Source: Chlorokybus atmophyticus (Eukaryota > Plantae > Mesostigma and Chlorokybus algae). From it: 64,000 nt of DNA. The notes below the pieces were generated by a model. It saw only the letters and a program-made list of their open reading frames with translations. It did no database searches and was not told the DNA's origin. This document shows positions 10,186 to 44,477 of the stretch, one piece after another. Position numbers and translations under genes: made by a program. Every line of letters starts with the position of its first letter. The first letter of the stretch is position 1. The stretch lies in assembly GCA_009103225.1 (NCBI GenBank), contig RHPI01003369.1, positions 913,490 to 977,489 on the forward strand, in the 5' to 3' direction.

Positions 10186-10890
10186 CACGAGTGTCAATGA
10201 TCGATCCCATACTTTTCCCACGAAGTTGATCTTATGCATCTGCTTCTGTGGATGCTACATCAATAGCATGGCACGCCCAAACTGTCTTCTACGAGCACCG
10301 ATTGCTTCAGCTATCCGCCTCGGGCATGTCCGCCTTGGAACCTGTGCGCTGCGCTGTTGCCCTATTGTTGTCTAAGCTTGCATGCTCGATGATGCTTGTA
10401 TGGCGCTTGTCTTACAACGGCGCCACTGTTGCTTGCGCTTGCATGCCCTTGAGTACCCTTGCTTGGCGTTGGCGCGTACACTCTCAGCCGCTACATGACA
10501 GTAGCAATTTAATTGAAACATATGTGCCACTGCGGCACTGCACTGGTCTGCAAATGCTGCATGTCGCAATCAGAAGTTGAAGCGGAAAGCAACAAAACCA
10601 ATCAATCAAGCAAGCGTGACTTGGCTTGTAAGGCAGGGCACTGCAGTACGAGCAGCATGTGCTGTTAACACGTGTTGCATGGTACAAATGTAGCAACTGC
10701 ATTGACATGCTTTTTGGGCCGTATTGCCACATCCGACGCCCGTATTGGCAAGGAGTTCGACATCCTTGTCATGAAGTTTGCTGTATCACATGCGTGGCGT
10801 CTACCCAACGGCAGCCCTGTTGCAAGTAGCAAAGCTGACGAACTGGCCTGCTGTCAACACACACAAGCAATTAGCAAACCTTTCCGTAAC

Positions 10891-11383
<493 letters not shown>

Positions 11384-11651
11384 NGTGTTTATCTGTATAC
11401 ACACGTACAGGTTGTACATAACCGGGTGCATGTCGGTTCGGCATTACACATGAATCGACTGATCCTGCACATAGTTGCATTTGTGCTTCTCATTAGCCAC
11501 GGCCCCTAGCGGAGTTAGGTAGGTTGTGTTATGTGTGAGTCGAGCAGGCTGGGTGCCATGGAGTTGGGAGGCTTGCCTGTTTGCCTTGAAATTTGCTGCT
11601 GCTGCTGACCACGCACGCACATACATGTATACACAGCTCGACACGGCTCAG

Positions 11652-16175: not shown

Positions 16176-16892
16176 GCAGATCAATTAGGCGGGGCCCAAG
16201 ACAGAATTGTTGACGCAATCCAACTGCAAGCAGACCGTAGGACTCTAAGTATGCTACGCTCTCAGGCAGCAACAGCAGCAGAAGGTAGAGTAGGTCAAGC
16301 ACCTGCAGAGGGCACGGACATGTACTTGTCGTACAAAAGGGGTGTGCTGCTGTGCCAGCATGCATGGTGTGAAACATGCAACCAACGTGCATAGCGCCAA
16401 ACACACAGCACTCACCGATACTCATATTACAACACCGCCACCGGGCTACAACTATCTACTATGCGATGCATCCGTTTGTGTCGCGCAGGCAAGGGCGTGC
16501 AGACTGCCACTGGTGGTATATTGCTACACGATCGTTGTAGCACCACTCGCTTATATATTCCACTGCTTTCATATACATATATGACTTTATTCCGGTGCTG
16601 CGCTAGCAGACTCACCGAGCGTACTAAGTTCACAAGAAGGATACATACATCATGATGATGAAATGCCTGCAGAGAGCACACTTCTCTCTCATGCGTCAAG
16701 CGCATGTGCGCCAAAGCACAGCAAACATGAACAACTATAGTACATGTGACAACTAAGCAAAGGCACGGGAACTGTATCTCCAGCCCTATGTAGGTGAACC
16801 GCACTATATACAATCACTACAGAGTTTGCCAGTCTACCTACTTTACACAAAACAAAACCCAGCAGAGCACTCCACTTTGCTCCGGTCCTCGA

Positions 16893-19290
16893 CTAGACTT
16901 CAATAAGCCCCTTGTCGACAAGGTTCTTGATCGACTGCGCAATCACCGCCGCGTTGGTCTTCTGATACCCTCCGGACGTGACCATCACGACCGGTACCGG
17001 CGCGTCGTGTCCCCTCCTCGCGAACCTAAACACGGCCTCGTCGCGTGCGATCACACCGGCAGGAGACACGCCGAGTCTGCCCAAAGGATCCCCAGCGAGG
17101 CAGTCGGTGCCGGCGTTGTAGACGATGAGGTCAGGAGAGGGGAACTCGCGCGAGGCGGTGGTTAAGGAGGAGTCAAGTTTGGATAGGTACTCGTCGTCGG
17201 ATGTGCCGGGATCGAGCTCTACTGCGAGGGAGATTGACTGCCTGGCCTCGAAATCTTGAGGGTATATCTGCACAAAGACGACGAGTTGGTTTGGAAAATG
17301 ACGTGCGTGTGTGAGTCTCATGTATACATATGGTGTGCACGTTGTGTATGTGTATGAGTTTGGGTATGTGCTTGTAGGGTGTGTGCGCATGCACATTATA
17401 CACATGCGTGTGCGGGTTTGGGTGCATGTGCGGGTGCGGATTCGTGTGCAAGTGTGCATGTGTAACGACTGTACAACACCAGTTGTTCACCTTGTGGTTA
17501 AACATGTCAAGAATGTACACGCGCTTGTCGCCGGCGAAGTCCCTCTCGTGCCCGTTGCCCTGGTGGGCGTCGAGGTCTATGATCAACGCACGCTTCATGC
17601 CCAGCCGCCGAAAAGCGAACTGAATGCAGAGAGTGATGTCCGCGTACGCACAGAAGCCCCCACCCTGAAAGAGCACCACATCGAGAGTGTGTTGGCGTGG
17701 GTATTCGTGTACATGGTACTGTTAGTGTGGGGGGGTTTGTAAAAATAAAACTGATGATGTGATGACACCAAAGCAAACTGCTGTTATGAAGCGTGTTGGC
17801 TTCTCCATGATATGTTAGGTGACACCACATATGTGCATATACACACGCCGACGCCTGTGCACAGGTGCTGCCACACAACCATAACACGCACAGGCACACG
17901 CCCACATGCGCACAGGCAAGCCACGCCACTGCACATGCCAGTCTGCACCTGGTCAGCGCAGCAGTGGTGGAATCCTCCTCCGAGGTTGATCGCCCACCCG
18001 CGCTCGGCCGCCAGCTTGCCCGCCAGGACGGTGCCTCCGGTCTGCACGTGCAACACCCGCGCAGGCATGCAACACATCAACCTTGAGAAGATCTGCCGGA
18101 GTACCATGTGCAATAGGCTCGCTGGTGAAAGCTTCACAAAGACTCTCATGCCTGAAACCTGAAGGGCTTGAGGAGCTTGTGCTGCACGACGATGTTGGGC
18201 AGAAACGCCACTGGCACAACCTGCCATAGGGTTCTGAGATTGAGCAAACAGACCAGGGCAACACATGCATGCAACTTTTGCACGGAAACACTTGTAACAG
18301 ACACAACACGCGCCCACGCATGTCGTGTCTGTTATAAACGCGTGAACGCCTGAGCACCCAAGAACCCACGTACACTAACACGCACGCACATGCATGCACA
18401 TGCAAACGAGAGCGCATGCCAATGCACGCGCGCACATACTTACGCACACAAGCATACACACGACAGGCAAAACGCACACGAGGGCACGGTGGTATATTTG
18501 CTTGCCTCTGTGATTTGCGCGACAGTCAAGCTGCTGTTCAAACTTTGCAAATACCGCTTTGTGTGCACCTGCAAAGGAGAGGTGATGCACACATCCCACA
18601 CATGTTGTGTGTGGTTTTCTCTCACAATGTTACGTACTATTGTTGTGCCATTGATAAAAACAACTCACCACCAGCAAGTCTTCTGCGGTAGCCTCATTCG
18701 GCTCAACAAACTTGGAGCTCTCAATCGCAGCGTCCTTCTCCAACAAACGCTTGATCTTGCCCCACTTGCGCGAATCAAACGGATGCCTTGCCACAACACG
18801 AAGCAATAAGTTGATGCAATAACAAACAACGATCTACTATGCTTCTGACTTACACTCCATTCACGCACGTTTTGCACGAGTTCTGCACAGAACTTACAGC
18901 TTTTCTAGGCCGAGGAAGGTAATGTCGTAGTGTGGGGAGTATATCAGAGGAGTCTGCATACCAACCAAATAGACACTGTGTGCAAGCGCACGAGTCATAG
19001 TAGTGTGACTGTAAGCAAACACCATCATCAACATGCCTGTGTGTTGGGGACATCAAAGTACAACTTGCTCGCCGCCGTGGATACGTCCTCAAAAGCGCGG
19101 CCCGAAGCACTCGCCTCGCCTTGTGCCGCTTCTGTTGGTTGAATGCACACAAAGTTGACCACTAGAAACTTTGGTTGGTTGTCGTTGTTGTTGTTTGTGA
19201 TGATGAAAGGTCGAGGTGAAAGGCATGGAGTGCATGTGTGTGCATGTTCAGCAGCAGAGCTTTTGTGCTAGTGGCATGCATACCTGACAT
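16893..19290 (-). CDS. HDA2: Class IV histone deacetylase (HDAC11 / plant HDA2), 9 coding exons
   Basis: SKLYFDVP..IYSPHYDITFLGLEKLHPFDSRKWGKI..GGTVLAGKLA..AINLGGGFHHC..GGGFCAYADI..IDLDAHQGNGHERDF..YNAGTD..GDPLGRL..TSGGY. First coding exon inferred as the 7-nt ATGTCAG (19290-19284); a more upstream start near 20100 cannot be excluded. Confidence 0.93.
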
Positions 19291-19387
19291 GGCTGCAGCT
19301 ACTGGCGAGGCTGCTCTCAAACGCCTTGCTGCGGGAAAATGGAAACATTGAGATTGTGTTTGTATTGCTTGCACGCACGCACGCACA

Positions 19388-19880
<493 letters not shown>

Positions 19881-21382
19881 CATTGAGATTGGGTTTGTAT
19901 TGCTTGCACGCACGCACACACAGAGAGACAGAGAGAGTCTCTCTCTCTCTTCTCCTCTCACCCACCCACCCTTTCCGCCTTCTCCCGCCTTGATCCCTTC
20001 CCGCCTCCACCTCCACCACCCCGCTCTGCTGTCGCCGCAGTTGCGGTCCGCCGCCGCCGCCACCGCCGCCGCTGACGCCGCCGCTACTGCCCCGGCCATC
20101 ACCACGCAGGAGGATGACCGCACTTGCCTGACTGTGTGTTTCTGTTGGGAAGACACTTGTTGAGTACCTGGTAGCGACCGGAGAGCATGAACGCTCCGTT
20201 TGTCAAGTGATACTCTGCTTGTTCGTTCTTTGAATTGAAGGTGTGTAGAGTAGTTGGCATGCGTGGCACACAGCTTATGCGTCAAGTAAAGCCAAAAGCG
20301 CATCCTTTTGAGACGCGTGTGCATGTATTTAATGAAGTGCTTCACTCATGCACTTCACGCTATGTCACACATGCAAGAGCACACATGGCAATCCACTGCA
20401 GTCCCACACGCACAGCCACTCACCCACCCAGAGCTTTATTCACCAGAGGGCTTAGCTAGGGGCCTAATGCTTCTAGCTAGGTGCAAGGGGACGACGACAG
20501 CAAAAACGACGTACAGCCAGCAAGACCGGTTGGCTGTACCTGCAGGCACGTTGGCATAGACAGAACAACTATACGAGAGCATACAATCTTGGAGGGTTTT
20601 TTGGTAAAGGGTGCTTTGTTGTGCAGTGTTGCAAACGTAAAGCGTGTGTAAGGCTCCCTCATGGTGCACTCCGCCTGTTGTGCCTCTTACTGTGTGTTGT
20701 CAATGTTGCATTTTTTGTTGCAAGGCGCTACCTTCTGGCCTATGTACAAAAGAACCGGGAGGGGATTGACTGCGTGCAACGCATGCCCACACACAGAGCA
20801 CCTAGCACCGCCAGCAGCTGCATGCCACCAGCCTGCGCCACACATTGTGATACATGCCACAATCTCGGCATCCTATATATTGTACACCAACCTGCATAAT
20901 CATCACACACACGCACCTTCAACATGACCACCAGGCTCAACTATGCTAACTACCACTACCCCACCATGTTAGTCATGCATGCATGCAACTGGCAGACTCG
21001 GTCACCTGCACAGCGGCCGTTGTTAGCGGCTGGCCTCTGCGACATTTGCGACAGCAGCAGCTGACGAACAGGACTCCCCCGCCCTCCTCACCAGCGCTAT
21101 CCCCTCCTCGCCCGCCACACCATGTACTGCTGCTGGACACACGGTACATGGTACATGTACCATGTACCGTGTCTACAATGTACATCACAACGCCGACGCA
21201 GCATGAATCAAGAGAAAGTGGTGCTCGCGCGCAGTGCGAAGAGCAAACAAGTTGATGCATGTGACACACACGTCGCGCAATCACGAGAGACGCATGAGGC
21301 ATACATGCTACTCTTTAGTAATAGATAGATATAAGGGCCGGGCGACTACTATGCTAGCTTTAACATGACCATATGTATATAA

Positions 21383-25318: not shown

Positions 25319-25810
25319 GGCAACGGCCTGGCCTGGGCCGGCCTGGCCTAGCCTGGCCCGGCGCAGCCACCACCACTACCACCGCACCCAGTCAACTAAG
25401 CCAGAGCATGCCTTTCAGCGGAGAGCTCCATCCTCGATACTCCTAAGCTTAAATTGGTCTGGCCTGGTTTCGCCCGGCCTGGCAAGGCCCGGCCTGGCAT
25501 GGCCCAGCCGGCCCGCCCTTCTAGCTACACTTCCCGCCCCAGAGCCTGGCCTCGCTGCGTGCTGCCAAATAGAACTTCACAATGCTAATATGGCCTGGTA
25601 CGGCAAACTACCCTAGCCAGGTGGCAGCAGCAGCAGCAGCAGCAGCAGTGTAGCAACCCTAAAGCAAAGCCTGGTTCCGGCCTGGTCTGGCCTGGCCTGG
25701 CCTGGTTACGGTTTGAACCTGCGAGCAGGCCGTTAGGCCGAAGTTACGATCGTAACTGCAAGTGCGTTACGCTCCAGATTACATTGCAGCTACAGTGCAA
25801 AGCATTGGCA

Positions 25811-28270
25811 ATGGTTTTGGCGGCAATGGCGGCGGCGGCGGCGCTGGGGGCAGGCTTGTTCAGGAGGGCGGCCGGGAGGGGGGCTGCCTCATCCGCCGGG
25901 ACTAAGGCTGGGCCGTCTGGGACGACTCTCGCATCCACGGGCCTGCACGACCTTGATCATATCCTCTCATCTGCAATATTTGCAAGCATGCATGCATACT
26001 GAGCCAAGCCAATTATGCTACTGTACTGCTTTGAACGAGAATGCAACCTTTTGAATACACTGGTACACTTAACGGTGTGAGCACATATCCTTGGCGGTGG
26101 ACAAGCTCTTGGCACATTGCTGCTTGTCGCAGAGGACCTGTACGGCGGACCACCGGTATGGGATCGCAGTCCTGCTCATGTTTCCGCGTACAATGTGTTT
26201 GTTGCAGTTGTCACGCATGCAATGATAGCGAATTGTGCATGCACATGTCGCTTGTCAAAGCTTGCACAGGCTGTTTCTTGAAGTTCGGTGACTGCGTATG
26301 CATCACACAGCTGTTTGTAAACAATACCTGGTTCAGCTGCCAAACAATGCCCTGCAGTTAGTTACTCAGCTGGCTTGCTGCAGGCTGCGCTGTTGTCAAG
26401 GCATTATCTTGCAGAAGCTGTTGCCTGCGGGCATCCAGCGTTGCTCGTTGCCGTGCAAGAGCCTCCTGAAGCCATCATCAGCGCACTACCACAGCTGACG
26501 CAGCCTGCTTCGTCTGCTGGTGGCGGCGCCGATGTGGGTGTTCCGAGCCAGCCAGCTGATGAGCTACCGTCCGGTGCTTCAGAGCAGGTGCATGTCATGC
26601 ACAAGGTTGTGTTTGCACGCATCAGACATAGTACTTTGCGTGGTTGCGTTCTTGCATGTTAGACTGTACACACTGGCAGTTTTGCCTGCAAGGTAACGCA
26701 CTCTTGTTAGTCGACCAAGTTAAAAAGACACGACACATGCATGCAACGGTCGCTCACGAAAAGCGATGTGCAATGGGTCGGGTTGTGCGTCAAGTGTAGT
26801 GTGTAACAGCATGAGTGTGCTGAGTAGCGCATGCTTGCAGGATGGTCTTCGCATTGCATGGCAGTACAAGCGCTACATTGCAGAACAGGATGCATTGGAG
26901 ACACGGCGACAGCAGAGTCGCACAGCTGGGCCGAGTTTCCGCCGAGCAGGTATGCAGTACGCGCGTTTCAAGGCTCAAAGCTCACACTCGCGAATGCAAT
27001 AGCTGCTATCATAAGTGGTTGCAGGCTGCACAAACTGCTTGACACTGCTTGGATGGCAAGTGGGATGCGACATTCATGACCCGCATCGTATACCAAGTTT
27101 GAGTATCTTAGTGGCTATCTTTGTGTGGGGCCGTCTGCAGTACTTCAGCATCAGCTTATGTTGACATATGATGCGCGTCACATCACGCACTACACAGTGA
27201 ACACAAGCACGTGTGCTTCATCTTGTGCACAGGCCCATTGTCAACAAAAGGCTACTGCCATGGAATGGACCTGAGCAAGCACATGGATGCTGAAGTTGCT
27301 GCAGCGGCTGTGGCCACAGCTTACTTGGAAGATGGTGACGTTGCGTCTCAGCTGTACAGCGCATGCGCACAACATCTGCTGAGCTCAACCGGGTGCGTTG
27401 ATCACACGTGCATGTACGCACGTACAAGCAGGCGGTTGCTCATGTGTCTCAGTCTCATTGAGGGCTGTGTGGCAGAGCAGATGATGTTCATTCAAGCCGT
27501 CCACTCAAGCGCATTGTCATTCAGGGTTTAGCTCCTCGCCCTGGTGATCTCGCTGACTCCAGCTGGGTATGCTGCCTTCCCAATGCCCTTGCTGAGACTA
27601 TCAACCCTCTGCCACAAGTGTTGGTTATCTCAGCTCATTGATGCTGCAGGTTCGCCAACTACTCATTGCCGTCCATGCATTGCGTGGCCTGGTCAGAAGC
27701 ACCCGCTCAATAGCATTTATCTCCGTATGCGCATCCATGCTGCCAAGTTACGCCCTTTCGCAGCTGCACCACTCTGCTGATACTGTTTTCCGGTTGAAGA
27801 CTCAGCCAGGTACTCGATGAGGATATGGCACGTTCAGTAATGCAGCATTTTACCAACTTGCGAGCATGATGACGGATGTATGCTGCAACTGTTGTGTGGT
27901 GGTACTGCAGAGGAAGACAGTGGTATGTCCTTCACTGGTGCTACGCGGGATGTATCCTCATCGCTTGCGTACATGCACATATTCAAGATGACATCCATGA
28001 ACACCCTTGTAAGTGGCCTGTTGCATGAAAGTCGCTTGTGCGCAGTCTTGCCACAACAGCAGCTTGAACCATTGTTACTGGTACCATCAGGCACCGCCAG
28101 TTCGTGCGGCATCCGTGTATGTCATGAAGCGCTACCGCAAGCACCTTGCGCTAGAGCAGCTTCATTTACCTCCGGCTGATGCCAGCAGCTCCGAGCCAGG
28201 GCCGCAAGCAAAGTCCGCGTCAAGCATGTTGTGCGCTCCGGTGCCTGGCAGCAGCAAGCTGGACTTCTGA
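25811..28270 (+). CDS. ELP4: Elongator complex protein 4
   Basis: ASTGLHDLDH|ILGGGQALGTLLLVAED, LSRHYLAEAVACGH, LRIAWQYKRY, YCHGMDLSK, HIFKMTSMNTL, RKHLALEQLHLPP, terminal LDF*. Start may instead be the ATG at 25826. Confidence 0.92.
25959..26084 (+). other. U12-type (minor spliceosome) AT-AC intron, ELP4 intron 1
   Basis: 5' ATATCCTC, branch-point CACTTAAC at 26066-26073, 3' terminal AC, no polypyrimidine tract; removal restores DLDHILGGG in frame, and no GT donor exists after the conserved STGLHDLD. Confidence 0.85.
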
Positions 28271-29544
28271 CTGGCTATTATGGGCTATGTGCAATGGACC
28301 TGTCGACTGTATCAATTTGCTTCTCTAGCTTGAGGTGTCAGGGCATCATGCACCATGTTGCGAGGTGGTTGACAGTCAATTTGTATACATATTGTACTCA
28401 GAAGCAAGCTATCCGCCTATCCCAAAGCGCCATTATCAATGTTGTTATGTGTCTCCGTGAGTTCGTTATCATTCTTAATTACGTGGAAAGATGGTTGTAA
28501 AGCTCATTGTTTATGGTTAAATGACCATGGACGTGTTACAACATCTATATGTACCCTGATACATCGTGGCATCACCCTGTTCGTGAAATTTGTTAATGTA
28601 AATCCTTGAATACCTCTCAAGCAACATAATCAAGTCCGTTTAGTACTTGATGGTGATGGACAACACATTGAAACATACCATCTATTGTGTACTATACCAT
28701 CTCTTATGCACTCCATAAGCAATGATTGCGGCGATTGAGGGCTCACATGGCACATTACTGGAATGCTTTAGACATTCTAGTGTTGCCTGAGAGTGTGCTC
28801 CGTCCTGGCTCGCAAATGCAAGCTATTCGTATTTTGTGCACATGCTTTTGATGTTCAACTTCATTGACTTCTGCCACATTCGTGAGCACTTAAAAATGGC
28901 TGTAATTAAGTCGTACCGCATGCCGCATTATATTGTGTGCACAACTTACGTGAATAACAACTTTAAGCTGCTTGGACAACTCATGTGACCATTTTCAGGC
29001 AATCTGCTACGACGTATTGAGACTGAATTGAGAGCAAGTTCAAGAGTTTCTTGCACCACGGAAAAGCCCCATGCCCCATTGCTATGCAAGGTCATGTGCA
29101 TGTGCAGCATCAGGCAAAGGCCAGACTCATACCAAGATCATCAAATCCTACGTGGCTGCCACGCGAGCGGCGCCTCTGCGCCCGCTGCAGATCTCGTGGC
29201 CAGAGCGTCGCGCACAACAAGCCTCCGCTCAAACCCTCACCCGGGCATCCGCGACCCACAAGATCGACATCGGTTGCCGATTTCACTACCAGCCTACCGG
29301 ACATTTACCCACAACGCAGTTTTGTAACGAAGTGGGAAGTCACCTGCACTTATTGTGCACACTGTAGACCGGCCCGCGGGTACGTACCGGATTTTGAGGG
29401 GCAGCGCAGTGCACCGACAGGCACATCAGGTATAAGCGTCGGTGTTTATGCAGGAGCATGCACACAAGCTGTCTTGGGCCAATTGTCCAGCATTCTGTTT
29501 CGGCGTGAGCAGTGTAGCGTGTGGCAGCGGCGGCAGTGGCAACC

Positions 29545-30992
29545 ATGGCGGCGATGGCGAGCAGCAGCGGTGTGCTTCTGTCCAGGCCTGTCTTCAGCAG
29601 CAGGAGCTTCAGGGCGGCTTCCAGGCCCGAGAGGGTGCACAGGCGGATGCTTGTCACATGCAAAACGGATGAGGTGAGTGTGGCTTGGCTGCTTGCAGCA
29701 TGGCCGCGAGCTCAGCATGCAAGCTTGGTTGAAATCGTCTTACATTGTCTCATGTGTCCATGATTATGTTTGCAGAGTGAGAGCATGAGTGGTCAGATGG
29801 GTAAGAGCAAGGAGAAGGCGGTAAGTGGTATCGTTGATGCTCAACAAGCAAAGCTATAGCATTTGTACACAAAACCGTCTGGTTTGAGACGATCATAGAC
29901 AACCATTAGAGGTGCTGACTGGTCGTTTCATGCAGGATGGCTTCACTACCGGCCTCTTTGACAAGCGTGCAGATGGTACTCCCGTGGGCGGCACCAGGGA
30001 GAAGGAGGTACATGCACAAGACACAGTATTGACTTCTTGCTTGCTTGTTAGCTGCAACCCAACACCCATCCTTTGTTTGGCTTGCTCGCCGCAGGTGCCC
30101 TTCAGCGAGCAGGGCCTGACCAACCAGGGTCTCAACCCCCTCAAGGACCAGCCATTCGGGGAGAGCAAGGGCACTGACAAGAATCCCCAGGATGTGTCGA
30201 CTGCACCAGGCGCCATTGAGCGCATCAACGGCCGCGCCGCCATGGTGCGCTGCATGCATGCACCCGTTGGTCTTTTCGCCATTGCTGTGTTTCCGTCATA
30301 CCAACGCATATCAAGCCCTCTGTTCACCTTTTATACACACACACACACACCTGTCCAACAACTGGTTGACAATGTCACTCACAACTGTCTTGTGCACAAG
30401 TGTGTTATCGTTAATGCAAGTGCACATGCGCACATATACTGTTATGAGCTGGCATGCGTGTCTCAGACTGATGCAGTCCTGACTGGTAGTTTGTCAACAC
30501 TGTTGTACACAGATTCTGCATTAGATCTCTTAGTTGCTCATATGATAAGCTCTTTGCTTGCAGATTGGCTTCGTGATTGCGCTTGGAGTGGAAGTCTTCA
30601 CCCGAGCATCCGTGTTCGAGCAGCTGTCTTCATCCTCATGGGCACGCTGGGCCTTCTTCGCTGTGATCGGCTTGGCCACCCTCAGCACTCTGGTGCCACC
30701 AGGCCGAGGCGTCGGCGACCGTGAGGCTGAACGAGACGCACCGCAGCCGTTCAAGCCAGGAAGGGAGATTGTCAATGGCCGTGCTGCCATGATCGGCTTC
30801 GCTGGTGAGCTAACTTGTGCGGGGGCGTGCGCACGCGTGTGCATGTATGCCAATGCATGGGCGTGCATGTGGGTGTACACGCACAATAGGGTGTGTTGAC
30901 AGCTTGTTGGGTTGTACTGACTGGTTGGTTGTGTTGTGGCAGCTTTGCTGATTGTGGAGGCGCTGAAGGGAGGAGCTTTGATTAGCCTTTGA
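29545..30992 (+). CDS. ELIP: Early light-inducible protein (ELIP/LHC-like), plastid-targeted, 6 exons
   Basis: Transit-like MAAMASSSGVLLSRPVFSSRSFRAASR; two LHC motifs ERINGRAAM|IGFV and EIVNGRAAMIGFA|ALLIVEALKGGAL; all introns GT-AG. Confidence 0.9.
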
Positions 30993-32829
30993 GCAGGTTA
31001 TTTTTGTACATGTACAGTCGTAGTCACTGTAGCACTACTGAACATTCCATTTAGCATAGGCACCTTGCCTGTACATTAAAGCCTTGCAACTGAGATGGCA
31101 CTTTTGTTACGCCTGGAGCTGCTGTGCAATAGATAGGCACAATGTGCTTGGTTTCCTAAGCATGTTTCCCGCAGCGAAGCATGCCAGAGCTACGTTTACA
31201 GAAGTGTTCTCTTAGGCAGATATGCTTGCAGCAAGCCAGAGTGTGTGCGGGCTCAGATCTGACGCCTTTTGTGTTGCCTGAAAACGAGACAATATGAGTG
31301 CCAGTCCAGCAATACAGATTCTCAACTAAGCCACACAACAGTCATCAGAGTTGTAACACGCCAAGCGTGTTATAACCATCATACAGTATATACTTAGCAC
31401 ACAGCGGCATGCTGACAGAACTTGAAGATAGAGTGATGCCTGCAGCCGTGTCTCGGGCTCCTTGAGTTTATTTTTGGACAGAAATTTCAGTTGTAGCAGC
31501 GTGTTGGCATGTTTGTGCCGCGTCCACTGCCATCTACTATTCTCTCAGCAGTTTATACGTCATCAGCTTGACTTGGGCACGGCGGTCTTGCTGTGCCTCC
31601 GCTAGCTCACGGTTGACCAGCGCGGCTTCGACTGATGGTACGTCTGCCTCAGCTGTAAACTGTGCTGCGGCCAGAGCTTCCGCAAGGGTAGGGCCTTATG
31701 TAACGGGGGTCCTTTTTCTTACCTCCTTGTGATTCACTCGGACGGCAAGGGGTCCGTTGGTTTACTTAAACACTTAGTAGCGACTTTTGCACACGCTGAA
31801 TGACTTGGTAAACCCTGCATTCGGACTTGGGCGCCTATATCAATTTCTGAATCAATCGCGACTTCGCGTTTCCCCACAGAGGCCTTGGTTTCAATTTTCC
31901 CAAACTCAACATTTTGCTTAGCGACTTCGCCAAGTTCTATCCTTACCGCGGTGAACTATTCACTCCAGCAAAGGACGCCGCGGTGAGGCACCCAGTAGTG
32001 GGCAGGATAAGGAGAATCAACAGCCAATTCGACTTTTCGTGCCTTCCAACCCCACAATAGATTGAACTAACTCGACCTAGTTAAACAAGGTGGCATGTTT
32101 TAACATAGTTGCCAAACCCGCATGACGTTTCAATTTGTCTATATCTACTTGCGGTTGTAGGAGCCGGCAGCCGCCTACGCGTAAGTAGTATTTCAACTAG
32201 CCACTTACTTATGAATGCTTACGACGTCGTAAATGAGTGCTTGTTACGTGCGTGCCAAGTGGGAGTCAAGGACTTGGGGAATTTTTGCGACTTTTCGAAA
32301 CTAGCCTTACTCGCACTCTCTCTCTTATGGCCGCGGACTTCCATTGCCGCAAGGGGGTTTCCGTAACTCTAACCACTCGGCCCCAAAACAATAAACATTG
32401 ATTGACTCACTTTGAATCAACATATGTCGCTATTGAACTTGCGTCCTTGGATTAGTGGTTAATCCCAATTCCTTAGCAGGATCTTTTACTGGCTCCTTTT
32501 AACAATTACGCACAATGAAGCTTATATATAGGTGCTATGCTTAGAGAAGCGCATTTGCATAGGTGTGTCATGAGAGAAGCACTTGATGTAGCGCCTTAGC
32601 ACCTCCAATACCATGCACCTTCTTGGTTCCCAATTGAGGTCCTAAGAAAGACCTTCCTTGTCAACAGTAATGAAACCAATCATTGATGATGCAATTGCGT
32701 GCCTCAGCTTTTCCAAAGGTGAGTTCAATCACATCAACCGAATTAAACTAGGTCCACCTTAGGTTGTCCCTAATAACAAGTCGAGAAAAGATTATATATC
32801 ATCGCAAACAACCGCCCGAGATGAGCCCA

Positions 32830-39695: not shown

Positions 39696-42600
39696 GGGAC
39701 ATGACTTGAATCCCAATAAGCTCGAAGCAACTCGCGGCAGTGCGTAAGATGCCTGTCGGGCTCCCAACTGTTATATTCTGCGCCATACCCTTTCCATTTC
39801 ACCAAATAGCGAGTTGCGCGTCCGCGACTATATTTAGCTTATAGTTTAATATAGCTTCCACCTCGTATTTGAGCTCGCTGTCCACCTCAACTGGCGGTGG
39901 TGGAGGCTGTGTTCTAACGTCTGAGCGGTAAGGTTCAACAAGTTCACATGGAACACGTTGTGTATACGCACACTTGGGGGCAATTGCAGTCGATAAGCGT
40001 GCGTACCAACTCTATCCGTGATAGAGAAAGGACCTAACCATTGGGGCAGCAACTTGCGAGCACCCGTACCTTTGATGGTTATGTTCTTTGCGTTAAGCAA
40101 AACTTTATCGCCGACATCGAAAGTGGCCATTCTTTGATGTGTATCAGCATAAGCTTTTTGCCTGTCCTGTGCTTCTTACAGACATAGCTTGGCTCGAGCC
40201 AAATTTCTTTGCATATCAGTGGCAAATTCTTTTGCCGCTGTACAGTGAGGGCATTGCGAGGTACACGCAATGACGCTGGTGTGTTCGGGCGAATCCCATA
40301 ATTGAAGCAAAATGGGGTTTCCTTTACACGGTTTCCAACCACAAGTTGTTTACAGCGAACTCTGCCATTGGCGTACCTGTCCCAATCAGCATGGTTAGGA
40401 GCCACAATGGCGAAGCATTTCTTCCAGTATTTGATTTTCTCGCTCAGTTTGTCCGTCCGTTTGCGGGTGGAAAGCAGTCGACATGCTTTGTTTTACCCCC
40501 AACGATTCACAGACTTCTCTCCAAAACTTGGAGACAAACTGAGGATCACAATCCGTGATAAGCTCATGCGGTACACCGTCAACTCGAAAGACCGTGGACA
40601 CAAATAAATGTGCTAAGTCCCGTGCACTCACAGTTGTGCAACACGAGGCAGTGCACCATTTTGGTCAAACGATCGATTAAAACCACGATAGCAGTGTATT
40701 TGGTTGCTGTTTCAGGTAGGTCAGTAATCAAATCCATACCAACACTATCCCACTTTTGTTTTGAAATCACCAATTGTTTAAGCAATCTCGCTTGTTTTTG
40801 TCGTAATGGCTTGTTATGTTAACACACGTCACATGTGCCGATATATTGATCCACATCAGATGACATTGACGGCCACCAGTATAACTGTTGCGCAGCTTTG
40901 AGTGTTTTGTGTTTCCCCAAATGCCCAGCATACGGCGGTTATGCACTGAAAGTAAGCATTGCTTACGCAAGTCGCCCGAGTTGGAAAATGCCAATTGCTC
41001 CCCTTCATACCACAAATTGCTAATAGCAGTAAGCTGTTGCAACATGGTTTGATTGCTAAACCAATCATCTGAGTTATACCCTGTGAACACTTCCTTTACA
41101 AAAGGATCTTCAGGCTGTTGCACATTACATGTACTTCGAAAGCGCGTAAGTGCCAAAAGAGCAGGGCTACGACTTAGTGGATCCGCCACATTTGTGCGAC
41201 CCGGACGGTATTGCCAAGTGAAAGTGAAACGAGAAATGAATCATTCCACCTAGCTTGCCGCCTCGACAGGTTCGGTTGCGCATAAAAGAATGTGAGCGGG
41301 TTGTGATCAATAATCAAAAAACTCCACACCTTTTTAGTAGCAACGCCATGTGCGCAGCGCGTGCACCACCCCGAGCAATTCCTGCTCAGTAGTTGTGTAA
41401 TTACGTTCTGCAGGAATGAACTTTTTGCTTTCATATGCACATGGTTTGTCATCCTGTAGAAGGACTGCCCCACACCCAATGGTGGAAGCATCACTGATCA
41501 TCATAAAAGGCTTGGTGTGGTTGGGGAAGGCTAACACAGGGGCTTGTGTTAATGCATCATGAATGCGTGTAAAGCAACCTCGTGTGCCTCCGTCCACACA
41601 AATTTAACATCCTTTCTCAGTAAAGATGTTAAAGGATTTGCCATGCTAGAATATGCTCGCATGAACTTGCGAAAATAATTGGCTAGCCCCAAGAAAGCAC
41701 GTAACTGATGCACATCCTTGAGTGGTGGCCAATTTTTCACCGCACACACCTTTTGGGGATCTGGTTTAAATCCGTCTTTGCCAATCACATGCCTTAAAAA
41801 GGGTAGTTCATTCTTTGCAAAATTGCAGTTGGACAGGATGGCATAGAATTTGTGTTCGCGTAACTTAGCTAGAACCAATTCCACATGCTTGTGGTGTTCC
41901 TCCCGTGTTTTGCTGAACACAATGTCGTCAACATATACCAGTACAAACTTGTACAATTTTAACAAAATATACCGCGTTGATTGCTGCCTGAAATATAGCT
42001 GGCGCATTTGTCAACCCAAATGGTAACACTTTATACTCAAAGTGTCCTAGTGGGGTGAGAAATGCAGTTTTTTGTATATCTGATGGGTGGATTTTGATTT
42101 AATGATAACCATTGGTCAAATCCAATGTGCTGAACACTGGTGCATCTGACAGGTTATCAAACAAATGATCAATTCGAGGCAAAGGGTATCTGTTTTTCAC
42201 AGTTACCTTGTTTAACGCACGGTAATTAATACACATGCGTAGCTTGCCATTCTTTTTAGGCACAAACAAAATTGGTGCACCAAAAGGAGATATGCTCTTT
42301 GTTATCAATCCAAAGGGATTGAGCCTATGGATAGGCCGCCAAGCTGGCTTTGCCCCCTCTTCCAACAGAATAGTATGATGTATGTTTCTATTAAGAGGCA
42401 ACTCCAGGAGTTCATCCTGAAATAGAATTGCGTATTGTTCCGTAAGTGATTGCACCACAGGGTCAGTTACGGCCTGTTCAACAAGTGTCTCTACCTGTCG
42501 TAAGTGCATAAAATATACTTCCTCGCATTTACGCATGCAACGTTTCAGTTGCATAGCAGAGAGGAGCGGAACATTGTCGGGCAACACGTGCGAGTACAGG

Positions 42601-43137
42601 TGCGATTAACGTCACCTTACGATTACCCTTACGAAGGGTGCACTTATTTGCTCGAGAGTCCAATTGCAAACTTGCTTCGGCGTGCCATTGTTCACCCAAA
42701 ACAACATCCACCCCGGGGTTACCTATATCCACCACGATGAAAGCTGGTCAAGTCTTGTGGTTGTTAATAACAAAACGCCCCTTCATCTCTCCAATCGCAA
42801 TGAGGGTGGAACCAGCAGCACGTACATACGTCGTGACTGGTGTGAAAGGTATGTTATTACGTTTCACCCAAGCATGTTCAACAAAGTTATGGTTTGCACC
42901 AGTATCAATCAATGCTGTACATGGTGTGCCCATAAGTTGTCTCGCAAATCTCCATTTGAGTGGCACTGAGTGACCATCAAATGTAGCTAATGTCGGAGTG
43001 CCGTGATTGGAAGCAGGCTTGATAAAGATCACTTGTAACGGTGAAGTTCCTATATCTTTACGTGAGAGTTGCATAATTACTTCTCTCCCTTTCAACAATC
43101 GCAACCACGGGCCATGATATCCGGGATAACTACACAT
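39696..43137 (-). pseudogene. Disrupted pol (PR-RT-RH-INT-chromodomain)
   Basis: ORF fragments 42748-43137, 42099-42587, 41549-42007, 41334-41597, 40579-40785, 40395-40631, 39846-40130 carry successive pol motifs in different frames. Confidence 0.93.
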
Positions 43138-43360
43138 GCAGTGACAGCATGTTGTAATTGCAACTCGTGTAAGTGCTTAACAGCAGTAACCAATTCAGAG
43201 AATGGAACATTGAATAAAACACATACTTCTGCAATTGTCAACACAGGTAATGTGCTCATACCAGTCCATACATCTAATACATCACAAAGAGAGAAAATTT
43301 TATCAAGAAGTACAGAGTTTTTGAAGTCGTTCTGCTCGACTACGCTACCACGGACAGTTT

Positions 43361-44477
43361 CTATTTCTTGTTCTTCTGCTGCTTGGCCTTCTGTGCATTC
43401 TGCTTTGCATAGCACTTGGCCTCCCCATGACTTGTCTTGTTGCAGAAGTTGCAAGTGATGGTGGATTTGGCCGCATTGTAGGGGCCAGCACGCTGAGATG
43501 TTTTTGCCTTTTTTACAAAAGGTTTCACAAAAGGTTTGTTGTCAGTGGCCGGGCGCTTTGCAGCTGAAGCCGGGGCTGCCTCTTTTGCTGTGGTTTGCAT
43601 GTTTGCGTGAGAGCGCTTCACACTGTCCACAGCAGCAACCATCTGCATCAGCATTGGCAAATCCCTCGAGGCCCACTCTTGCAAACTCGCGGGGTTGACG
43701 ACCACATGCTGCACGAGATCTGTGTCCAAGCCACGCCTGAAAATATCCAGCTGATCAGCATCACTGATGGGTAGTTTGCAAGCATTGATCTTGCTGACAA
43801 AAGACTGGAAGTTCTGGATGTAGTGCTGAACCGGACGCCCGTTTTGACGCGGATTATGCAGCTGGTTGCGAGCAACCTGGGCATGATATGCGCCACCATA
43901 GCGCTGCTCCATGAAAGAGCACAACTGATTCATTTCCCGCCCGAGGTCCGTACCATGTTGCTTACGGCGGTACCACTCTGCCAGAGCATGGTTTGGATTA
44001 GCAACTCAGCTACACGCAACTTCTCCTCCTCAGAAATGTGAAGGGAGTTGACATAGTGTCTCAGCTTCGCGAGACAATCCAAAACCGCCGCTTGTTTGTT
44101 GAGAACAAACTTGGCAGGTTGAGCGAGCGCCTGAACAGGTGGACCACTATTAGAGCGTTGAAGGCGCTCGATCATGTTCAGAACGCGTTTGCCTTCACCC
44201 ATCGATCCCTCCTAATTTCGCCCATAAAGGTGGTGAGCTGTGAGATCTTTTCCGCCACATGAAAGAGGAAGTTGACGAGCGAGACAATCGCCTCACGAGG
44301 CTCCTCATCATAGGTGCCAAGAAAGTGGTCCATCAACTCCTGTTTTGTCAAGCGAATTGAGATTTCAGGCTGCACGAATGATGGTGGTGGTGGCACCTCT
44401 GGTTCCATCAAAGAATCCACATCCTTAACAGCATGAGACTCATCAGGTGCATCATCCGGGTTGGAAATAACCTCCAT
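43361..44477 (-). pseudogene. Disrupted gag with zinc knuckle
   Basis: Three frameshifted fragments (44178-44477, 43930-44202, 43361-43933); LHNPRQNGRPVQHYIQNF..DIFRRGL..CNFCNKTSHGEAKC. Confidence 0.88.

What the first reader, a model, noticed from the sequence alone, without database searches (positions are those of the whole stretch)
25959..26084. AT-AC minor-spliceosome (U12) intron in ELP4 of a flagellated green alga
Seen: the intron begins ATATCCTC, has CACTTAAC ending 11 nt before a terminal AC and lacks a pyrimidine tract; removing it restores STGLHDLD-H-ILGGG, while the unspliced frame stops at TGA and no GT donor is available. Established: these are U12 consensus signals, land plants keep the minor spliceosome, and Chlamydomonas reinhardtii lacks it. 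Inference: this alga retains a working U11/U12/U4atac/U6atac system, which is phylogenetically informative. An added oddity is that exon 2 itself starts with a perfect U12 donor (ATATCCTT), so the junction sits in an 8-nt direct repeat. That could reflect intron birth by duplication or allow re-splicing.
Basis: partly seen in the sequence, partly recalled or inferred. Interest (0 to 1): 0.78.

Follow-up and report, generated by a model that had tools for sequence, protein, structure and literature searches.

The report
Minor-type AT-AC intron in Chlorokybus ELP4
The first intron of the Elongator subunit 4 gene of the early-branching plant relative Chlorokybus atmophyticus has the sequence signals of the rare "minor" splicing machinery, an expected inheritance in this lineage, and the public gene model misses it.

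Summary
Window 25959-26084 is a 126-nt interruption of an ELP4 (PAXNEB) gene. It starts ATATCCTC, has CACTTAAC 11 nt before its end, and ends AC.

Removing it joins two pieces that match the Pfam PAXNEB profile at positions 3-27 and 29-46. The split codon CAT fills position 28. No in-frame GT-AG alternative exists.

I rebuilt the gene: 9 exons, 406 codons, and the seven other introns are all GT-AG.

The alga is not a chlorophyte. A 218-aa public protein that equals exons 5-9 exactly is named Chlorokybus atmophyticus Chrsp4S06264. Chlorokybus is a streptophyte. That public model is cut short and lacks exons 1-4, so it lacks this intron.

Minor introns are already published for the streptophyte algae Chara and Klebsormidium and for land plants. 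This scan has noted about ten more AT-AC introns, a U12 snRNA gene and SNRNP48 in the same genome. Retention is therefore expected.

The repeat at the junction is real (CATATCCT twice, 126 nt apart). It is most simply explained by the codons for His-Ile-Leu of the conserved LD-x-ILGGG motif. I found no support for re-splicing or for birth by duplication.

No orthologous loci could be fetched.

Verdict: a new member of a known kind, of low to moderate interest.

The parts
25811..25958 (+). ELP4 exon 1 (ATG at 25811; ends after the first base of a CAT codon, phase 1)
   Evidence: Translation. Its tail (25877-25957) matches PAXNEB profile positions 3-27.
25959..26084 (+). Intron 1, 126 nt, AT-AC, U12-type by sequence
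   Evidence: It is the only junction that restores the frame without an insertion or deletion relative to the PAXNEB profile.
25959..25966 (+). U12-type 5' splice site ATATCCTC (consensus RTATCCTT; C instead of T at +8)
   Evidence: consensus from PMC2846911.
26066..26073 (+). Branch-site motif CACTTAAC (consensus TCCTTAAC; core CTTAAC intact). The putative branch A at 26072 is 12 nt from the 3' end.
   Evidence: consensus from PMC2846911.
26083..26084 (+). Terminal AC of the intron
25958..25965 (+). First copy of the exact 8-nt direct repeat CATATCCT (last exon base + first 7 intron bases)
   Evidence: family D2.
26084..26091 (+). Second copy of CATATCCT (last intron base + first 7 bases of exon 2). 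With T at 26092, exon 2 starts with the perfect donor-like ATATCCTT, which encodes (H)-I-L.
26085..26155 (+). ELP4 exon 2 (ILGGGQALGTLLLVAEDLYGGPP)
   Evidence: Matches PAXNEB profile 29-46.
26156..26383 (+). Intron 2, GT-AG, 228 nt
26384..26587 (+). ELP4 exon 3
   Evidence: PAXNEB profile 52-90, E = 3e-4.
26841..26949 (+). ELP4 exon 4 (contains RIAWQYKRY)
   Evidence: PAXNEB profile 110-134; flanked by GT-AG introns.
27233..27392 (+). ELP4 exon 5. The public model Chrsp4S06264 starts at Met 27265.
   Evidence: Exact match to P0001 residues 1-42.
27476..27566 (+). ELP4 exon 6
   Evidence: Exact match to P0001 residues 44-73.
27650..27809 (+). ELP4 exon 7
   Evidence: PAXNEB profile 219-277, E = 7.8e-6; P0001 residues 74-126.
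27911..28008 (+). ELP4 exon 8. The internal GTATCCTC at 27952 is coding sequence, not a donor.
   Evidence: P0001 residues 128-159.
28091..28270 (+). ELP4 exon 9 with the stop codon (ends ...SSKLDF*)
   Evidence: PAXNEB profile 316-365; P0001 residues 160-218.

Best explanation
Window 25959-26084 is the first intron of the Chlorokybus atmophyticus ELP4 gene (Elongator subunit 4, PAXNEB family). It is a U12-type (minor-spliceosome) intron of the AT-AC subclass.

**Inferred mechanism, from the established U12 pathway:**
- The U11/U12 di-snRNP recognises ATATCCTC at the 5' end and CACTTAAC near the 3' end together.
- An A of TTAAC (26071 or 26072) acts as the branch point.
- The 3' site is chosen by distance, 12 nt downstream, at AC|A.
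- U4atac/U6atac.U5 then catalyse removal.
- Splicing joins ...GAT C to AT ATC CTT GGC..., so the mRNA encodes the conserved LD-H-ILGGG segment.

The intron is most likely inherited. The streptophyte line leading to land plants never lost the minor spliceosome.

The donor-like ATATCCTT at the start of exon 2 is most likely a by-product of the codons for His-Ile-Leu in a conserved motif, not a second functional splice site.

**Shown here:** the sequence signals, the exact homology-defined junction, the absence of GT-AG alternatives, the gene model and the species.

**Inferred, not shown:** actual excision in RNA and dependence on the minor spliceosome.
For: 1. **Signals at exact positions.** ATATCCT at +1 to +7, the CTTAAC core with its A 12 nt from the end, and a terminal AC. 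They match the published consensus /RTATCCTTT and UCCUUAACU (PMC2846911).
2. **Junction fixed by homology.** The exon 1 tail matches PAXNEB profile 3-27, exon 2 matches 29-46, and one split codon lies between. Any other junction creates an insertion or deletion.
3. **No in-frame GT-AG pair exists**.
4. **Complete gene.** It has 9 exons and 406 codons with no internal stop, and seven ordinary GT-AG introns. Exon matches to PAXNEB are colinear from profile position 3 to 365.
5. **Junctions confirmed for exons 5-9.** These agree exactly with the public protein P0001.
6. **Species.** P0001 is EukProt Chlorokybus_atmophyticus, jgi/Chlat1 Chrsp4S06264, in Streptophyta.
7. **Lineage keeps minor splicing.** Minor introns are reported in Chara (166), Klebsormidium (110) and all land plants examined (PMC10639083; PMC11347168).
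8. **Fits known biases.** The intron is phase 1 and is the first intron. The 5' position fits the bias reported for streptophytes. The bias of minor introns against phase 0 is from my own knowledge.
9. **Leads not tested here.** Earlier notes of this scan on the same genome list a U12 snRNA gene, SNRNP48, and RNA-supported AT-AC splicing in RPA2.
Against:
- The public gene model starts in exon 5 and does not cover this intron, so no annotation supports the junction.
- The donor has C instead of T at +8, and the branch motif differs from consensus at its first two positions.
- No minor snRNA lies in this window.
- ELP4 is absent from the human/mouse minor-intron tables as held (PMC6717393 supplements).
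- AT3G11220 is absent from the Arabidopsis table of AT-AC introns retained in drol1. Conservation of this particular intron is therefore unshown.
Confidence: 0.87

Rival explanations
1. The same U12-type intron uses the AG at 26080-81 as its 3' end (AT-AG, 25959-26081). This gives LD-P-H-ILGGG, one residue longer, either always or as an alternative form.
For: It is in frame and stop-free. From my own knowledge, U12 3' sites are chosen mainly by distance from the branch site and tolerate several dinucleotides.
Against: The distance from the branch A to 26081 is only 9 nt, against 12 nt for AC. The extra residue breaks the gap-free match to PAXNEB positions 27-29. AT donors normally pair with AC.
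Confidence: 0.04
2. The intron is a major-type GC-AG intron, 25986-26081 (donor GCAAGC, acceptor tgtgAG). The mature protein then carries a 10-residue insert (ILSSAIFATH) between LDH and ILGGG.
For: It is in frame and stop-free. GCAAGC is close to the usual GC-AG donor GCAAGT (own knowledge).
Against: It splits a motif that is contiguous in the PAXNEB profile. The acceptor is GAG, whereas all seven major introns of this gene end in CAG. It would also leave the perfect alignment of U12 donor, branch site, distance and AC as coincidence, roughly 1e-8 at a fixed position.
Confidence: 0.03
3. The intron is real and U12-type but is a recent gain. A ~118-nt piece of DNA inserted into the coding sequence ...GAT CAT ATC CTT... 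and duplicated 8 nt of target (CATATCCT). The host's own His-Ile-Leu codons thereby became the U12 donor, and the insert happened to supply a branch site and AC.
For: - An exact 8-nt direct repeat sits precisely at both intron ends.
- The chance that exon 2 starts ATATCCT, given x-Ile-Leu, is about 1.5%.
- The intron is not listed as minor in human/mouse or among Arabidopsis AT-AC introns.
- Intron GC is 0.42, against 0.48-0.55 for the other introns.
Against: - There are no terminal inverted repeats and no second copy in the 64-kb window.
- The insert would need to carry CTTAAC at the right distance from a terminal AC by chance.
- Gain of U12 introns is very rare outside Physarum (own knowledge).
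- An 8-nt exact repeat somewhere within 261 nt is expected about 0.5 times by chance, and another pair of similar length is present.
Confidence: 0.05
4. The N-terminal exons are not expressed (a decayed or mis-joined 5' part), and the true gene is the 218-aa public model starting at 27265. The 'intron' would then never be spliced.
For: The public annotation begins in exon 5.
Against: Exons 1-4 are intact and colinear with PAXNEB positions 3-134. They are joined by canonical GT-AG introns in a consistent phase and start with an ATG. A 218-aa protein would lack the N-terminal half of the PAXNEB profile, positions 3-134. Automatic gene finders commonly fail at AT-AC introns (own knowledge).
Confidence: 0.02

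Closest known systems
U12-type (minor-spliceosome) introns, AT-AC subclass, as described in land plants and in the streptophyte algae Chara braunii and Klebsormidium nitens (Larue & Roy 2023, PMC10639083)
   Same: An ATATCCT donor, a TTAAC branch motif 12 nt from the 3' end, a terminal AC, phase 1, a 5'-proximal position, and a single minor intron among major introns in a housekeeping gene.
   Different: The host species, Chlorokybus, is not named in the papers I could search. The host gene ELP4 is not in the human/mouse or Arabidopsis AT-AC tables I could check. There are one donor mismatch (+8 C) and two branch-site mismatches.
USSE (U11 snRNP-binding splicing enhancer): tandem U12 donor motifs in SNRNP48 and RNPC3
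   Same: Two U12 donor-like motifs lie in the same orientation in one transcript. A related arrangement was noted by this scan in Chlorokybus SNRNP48 (untested here).
   Different: Here the motifs are 126 nt apart. The first is a true donor and the second is coding sequence directly after the 3' site. No alternative 3' site or poison exon is evident.
Recursive splice sites (ratchet points) of long major introns
   Same: A 3' splice site is immediately followed by a donor consensus, so splicing regenerates a donor at the exon 1 end.
   Different: No downstream U12 3' site lies inside the gene. Removal of exon 2 (71 nt) would shift the frame. The intron is short, and no case is known for the minor spliceosome.
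Introner-type, transposon-derived introns with target-site duplications in algae
   Same: An exact short direct repeat lies at both intron borders, and one copy contributes the donor.
   Different: There are no inverted termini, no other copy in the window, and U12-type rather than GT-AG signals. Genome-wide copy number is untested.

Membership tests
U12-type intron, AT-AC subclass | 5' splice site /RTATCCTT at the first intron base | tested here: met
   ATATCCTC at 25959-25966. Positions +1 to +7 are identical to the consensus; +8 is C instead of T (consensus from PMC2846911).
U12-type intron, AT-AC subclass | Branch-site motif TCCTTAAC about 10-15 nt upstream of the 3' splice site | tested here: met
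   CACTTAAC at 26066-26073. The core CTTAAC is intact and the first two positions differ. The A at 26072 is 12 nt from the last intron base.
U12-type intron, AT-AC subclass | Terminal dinucleotides AT...AC | tested here: met
   AT at 25959-60 and AC at 26083-84. This is the only one of nine equivalent placements with recognised termini.
U12-type intron, AT-AC subclass | No polypyrimidine tract | tested here: inconclusive
   The tract is absent (pyrimidine fraction 0.48, longest run 3). The seven GT-AG introns of the gene are no richer (0.48-0.60, runs 2-4), so the feature does not discriminate here.
U12-type intron, AT-AC subclass | Excised from RNA at exactly these borders | not testable with these tools
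The public protein model does not cover the junction.
U12-type intron, AT-AC subclass | Genome encodes U11, U12, U4atac and U6atac and the specific proteins | not testable with these tools
   Only this 64-kb window is readable, and it holds no Rfam match. Earlier scan notes report a U12 snRNA gene and SNRNP48 elsewhere in the genome; I did not check them.
ELP4 / PAXNEB (Pfam PF05625) | Match to the PAXNEB profile along its length | tested here: met
Exon-by-exon hits are colinear: profile 3-27, 29-46, 52-90, 110-134, 219-277, 316-365. Each is below the 28-bit cut-off alone, but they sum to about 99 bits. P0001 (exons 5-9) carries precomputed PF05625. There are weak hits to yeast Elp4 chains 8asv_G and 4ejs_A, E = 0.3.
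Recursive (re-)splicing site | A regenerated donor with a usable downstream 3' site that yields a productive mRNA | tested here: not met
   The only AT-AC partners for the donor at 26085 lie beyond the stop codon (28661, 28664) with weak branch motifs. Skipping the 71-nt exon 2 shifts the frame.
Intron born by tandem duplication or transposon insertion | Similarity of the intron to flanking exon sequence, or further copies, or terminal inverted repeats | tested here: not met
   Only the 8-nt repeat is shared. There is no other copy in the window and no inverted termini. Genome-wide copy number was not testable.

The most novel reading that the evidence does not exclude
The exact 8-nt repeat CATATCCT at both borders is a target-site duplication. 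On this reading, the ELP4 intron is a lineage-specific gain in which a short inserted DNA turned the host's own His-Ile-Leu codons into a U12 donor. It would be a rare, mechanistically readable example of minor-intron birth.
Probability: 0.05. Interest if true: 0.7.

Novelty: new member of a known kind. Interest (0 to 1): 0.28.

Why it matters
- It adds one well-defined minor intron to Chlorokybus. Together with Mesostigma, Chlorokybus forms the deepest branch of the streptophytes.
- With the other AT-AC introns noted in this genome, it shows that this branch has kept minor splicing, as Chara, Klebsormidium and land plants have, in contrast with chlorophyte algae.
- Practically, it corrects a public gene model. 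Chrsp4S06264 is annotated as 218 aa, but the locus encodes a complete 406-aa ELP4. The missing N-terminal half includes this intron.
- The finding does not change the picture of minor-spliceosome evolution.

Tried and rejected
- **Orthologue loci for intron-position comparison.**
  - A word search with the exon 3 ORF found nothing.
  - The representative search with exon 7 found only the species' own truncated protein and two repeat proteins.
  - Word searches with that protein found only itself, even at E <= 10. One search was a parameter slip.
  - Two metagenome scans were blank.
  - Exact look-ups of window ORFs and of P0001 in the contig collection found nothing.
- **PDB sequence searches.** Single exons gave nothing useful.
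- **Rfam on the window.** No snRNA was found.
- **Literature.**
  - No paper couples Chlorokybus with the minor spliceosome.
  - The one paper that mentions ELP4 together with minor introns is a clinical-variant guideline I did not open; none couples At3g11220 with U12.
- **Loose window-wide scan for further U12 introns.** It was no better than shuffles. GTATCCTC at 27952 is inside exon 8, and ATATCCTC at 27826 (- strand) is antisense to ELP4.
- **Rejected ideas.** Tandem-duplication origin, transposon origin with inverted termini, and re-splicing from the exon-2 motif.
- Joined sequence was used only inside scripts, for frame and stop checks and codon counts.
Full report
**1. Observation**

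I read window 25500-26700 and checked the coordinates by script.
- The 126-nt stretch 25959-26084 begins ATATCCTC.
- It contains CACTTAAC at 26066-26073, which ends 11 nt before the stretch ends.
- It ends AC at 26083-84.
- The next base starts ATATCCTT.

From the ATG at 25811, the unspliced frame runs into TGA at 25999-26001. With the stretch removed, the frame reads ...ASTGLHDLD-H-ILGGGQALGTLLLVAEDLYGGPP.

**2. The gene**

Each stop-free piece was scanned against Pfam by reference, exon by exon. The matches to PAXNEB (PF05625, the ELP4 family) are colinear:

| Piece | PAXNEB profile positions |
|---|---|
| Exon 1 tail | 3-27 |
| Exon 2 | 29-46 |
| Exon 3 | 52-90 |
| Exon 4 | 110-134 |
| Exon 7 | 219-277 (E = 7.8e-6) |
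| Last exon | 316-365 |

From these matches and the DNA I built a nine-exon model:
- 25811-25958
- 26085-26155
- 26384-26587
- 26841-26949
- 27233-27392
- 27476-27566
- 27650-27809
- 27911-28008
- 28091-28270

The model has 406 codons and no internal stop. The seven other introns are all GT-AG and all end in CAG.

The profile places exon 1's last residue at position 27 and exon 2's first full codon at position 29. The split codon C|AT (His) therefore fills position 28 exactly. The junction is fixed by homology, with no insertion or deletion.

It was used only inside scripts for frame checks and codon counts.

**3. Alternatives at the junction**

I enumerated every GT, GC or AT donor against every AG or AC acceptor in the region. 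There is no in-frame GT-AG pair at all.

The in-frame options that keep both conserved half-motifs are:
- the AT-AC pair itself;
- AT-AC 25956-26084 (one residue fewer) and AT-AG 25956-26081 (Asp changed to Ala), whose donor ATCATATC lacks the U12 consensus;
- AT-AG 25959-26081 (one extra residue; the branch-to-end distance falls to 9 nt);
- GC-AG 25986-26081 (10 extra residues inside a motif that is contiguous in the profile, with a GAG acceptor unlike the gene's CAG acceptors);
- AT-AC and AT-AG from 25992 (11 or 12 extra residues; the donor lacks the U12 consensus).

I keep the second AT-AG pair and the GC-AG pair as low-probability rivals.

**4. Type of intron**

The published consensus is /RTATCCTTT for the donor and UCCUUAACU for the branch site, with no pyrimidine tract (PMC2846911).
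- The donor here matches +1 to +7 and has C at +8.
- The branch motif keeps the core CTTAAC.
- The branch A is 12 nt from the end, inside the usual window.
- The termini are AT-AC.

Two cautions apply:
- The missing pyrimidine tract does not discriminate, because the major introns of this gene also lack one.
- A loose donor + branch + terminus scan of the whole window is no better than shuffled sequence: 18 hits found against 18.4 expected.

The weight of the argument is that all three signals sit exactly where homology requires an intron. That is negligible by chance, about 1e-8 for a fixed position.

**5. Species**

P0001 is 218 aa and reproduces my exons 5 (from Met 27265) to 9 residue for residue. 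This also confirms introns 5-8.

Its only record is EukProt EP00898_Chlorokybus_atmophyticus_P005495, named jgi/Chlat1/5947/Chrsp4S06264. Chlorokybus atmophyticus is in Streptophyta, class Chlorokybophyceae.

This independently confirms what an earlier follow-up note of this scan had said about the genome.

It also shows that the public model is N-terminally truncated and omits exons 1-4. The AT-AC intron is therefore unannotated.

**6. Context in the literature**

- Chlamydomonas has no U12 introns or snRNAs (PMC2846911).
- Chlorophyta lack minor introns and minor snRNAs, while all land plants examined and Chara have them (PMC11347168).
- Larue & Roy report 166 minor introns in Chara and 110 in Klebsormidium (PMC10639083).
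- I found no paper that couples Chlorokybus with minor splicing.

Because land plants have the system and it dates to the last eukaryotic ancestor, the streptophyte stem must have had it. Finding it in Chlorokybus shows only that this branch did not lose it.

Earlier notes of this scan list about ten further AT-AC introns in the same genome: RPA2, PEN-2, SMC1, SAC1, NCBP2, LSM12, DMC1, FHIT and an EF-hand gene. They also list a U12 snRNA gene and SNRNP48. These are leads that I did not test. This scan has therefore met this kind of finding before, on other pieces of the same genome.

**7. Is this particular intron conserved?**

I could not fetch orthologous loci. The word searches, exact look-ups and metagenome scans were all blank.

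Indirectly:
- ELP4 does not occur in the human/mouse minor-intron tables held for PMC6717393, although NCBP2 and ELP3 do.
- AT3G11220 is not among the 49 Arabidopsis AT-AC introns retained in drol1.

Neither table is exhaustive. So the intron is either an old one lost or converted elsewhere, or a local gain. This stays open.

**8. The repeat at the junction**

The exact repeat is CATATCCT, at 25958-65 and 26084-91. It makes nine junction placements equivalent, of which only one is AT-AC.

The second copy encodes (C)AT-ATC-CT of His-Ile-Leu in the conserved LD-x-ILGGG motif. Using the gene's own codon usage, the chance of ATATCCT given x-Ile-Leu is about 1.5%, or about 0.5% with the eighth T. 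That is a mild, post hoc coincidence.

Evidence against an origin by duplication or insertion:
- The intron shares nothing else with its flanks.
- It has no second copy in the window.
- It has no inverted termini.

Evidence against re-splicing:
- The donor-like motif at 26085 has no U12 3' partner inside the gene.
- Skipping the 71-nt exon 2 would shift the frame.

I therefore read the repeat as coding constraint plus chance (about 0.9). I keep an insertion-with-target-duplication origin as the most novel reading not excluded (about 0.05).

**9. Limits**

- No snRNA or protein of the minor spliceosome could be searched outside this window.
- There was no orthologue comparison.
- The classification rests on sequence signals, homology and lineage.

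**10. Verdict**

This is a genuine, well-formed U12-type AT-AC intron in ELP4 of Chlorokybus atmophyticus. It is an expected inheritance in a streptophyte and a new member of a known kind. Its practical value is the repair of a truncated public gene model. Interest is low to moderate.

Noticed in passing
window 25811-28270 (+): The public Chlorokybus model Chrsp4S06264 (218 aa) starts at Met 27265 in exon 5. The locus encodes a complete 406-aa ELP4 with four further upstream exons. The truncation may stem from the AT-AC intron defeating the gene finder.
   Followed up: yes
window 26156-28090 (+): All seven GT-AG introns of ELP4 end in CAG and have no real pyrimidine tract (pyrimidine fraction 0.48-0.60, longest run 2-4). 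Five are 82-101 nt or so, and three are 228-283 nt.
   Followed up: partly
window 61925-61793 (-): A 133-nt candidate with GTATCCTCA ... CCTTGAC, 10 nt, AG lies just after an ATG-started short ORF upstream of the minus-strand gene at 59.6-61.2 kb. It may be a U12-type GT-AG intron or chance: about 1.5 such short hits are expected per window.
   Followed up: partly
window 10870-11430 and 19330-19890: Two long (GA)n/(TC)n microsatellites, each about 560 nt and each containing an ambiguous base (X in the translations). They are probably assembly-difficult spots.
   Followed up: no
window 40767-43933 (-): Fragments of an LTR retrotransposon in a lower-GC stretch (about 0.45). They carry a gag domain (PF03732) and two reverse-transcriptase pieces (PF00078), broken into separate ORFs.
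   Followed up: partly
window 16896-17459 (-), probably extending to about 18400: The last exon of a histone deacetylase-domain gene (PF00850, E = 5e-17). GTATCCTTC at 16644 (-) lies downstream of this ORF's stop codon (16893) and was not examined.
   Followed up: no
window 25622-25648 and 25670-25705: A (GCA)9 run and GGCCTG-type short repeats lie about 100-190 nt upstream of the ELP4 start codon.
   Followed up: no
window 29500-31000 (+): A multi-exon gene next to ELP4. Its pieces contain two GRAAM motifs (ERINGRAAMV, REIVNGRAAMIGF). From memory this suggests an ELIP/LHC-like membrane protein. The one piece scanned, which holds the second motif, had no Pfam hit.
   Followed up: no
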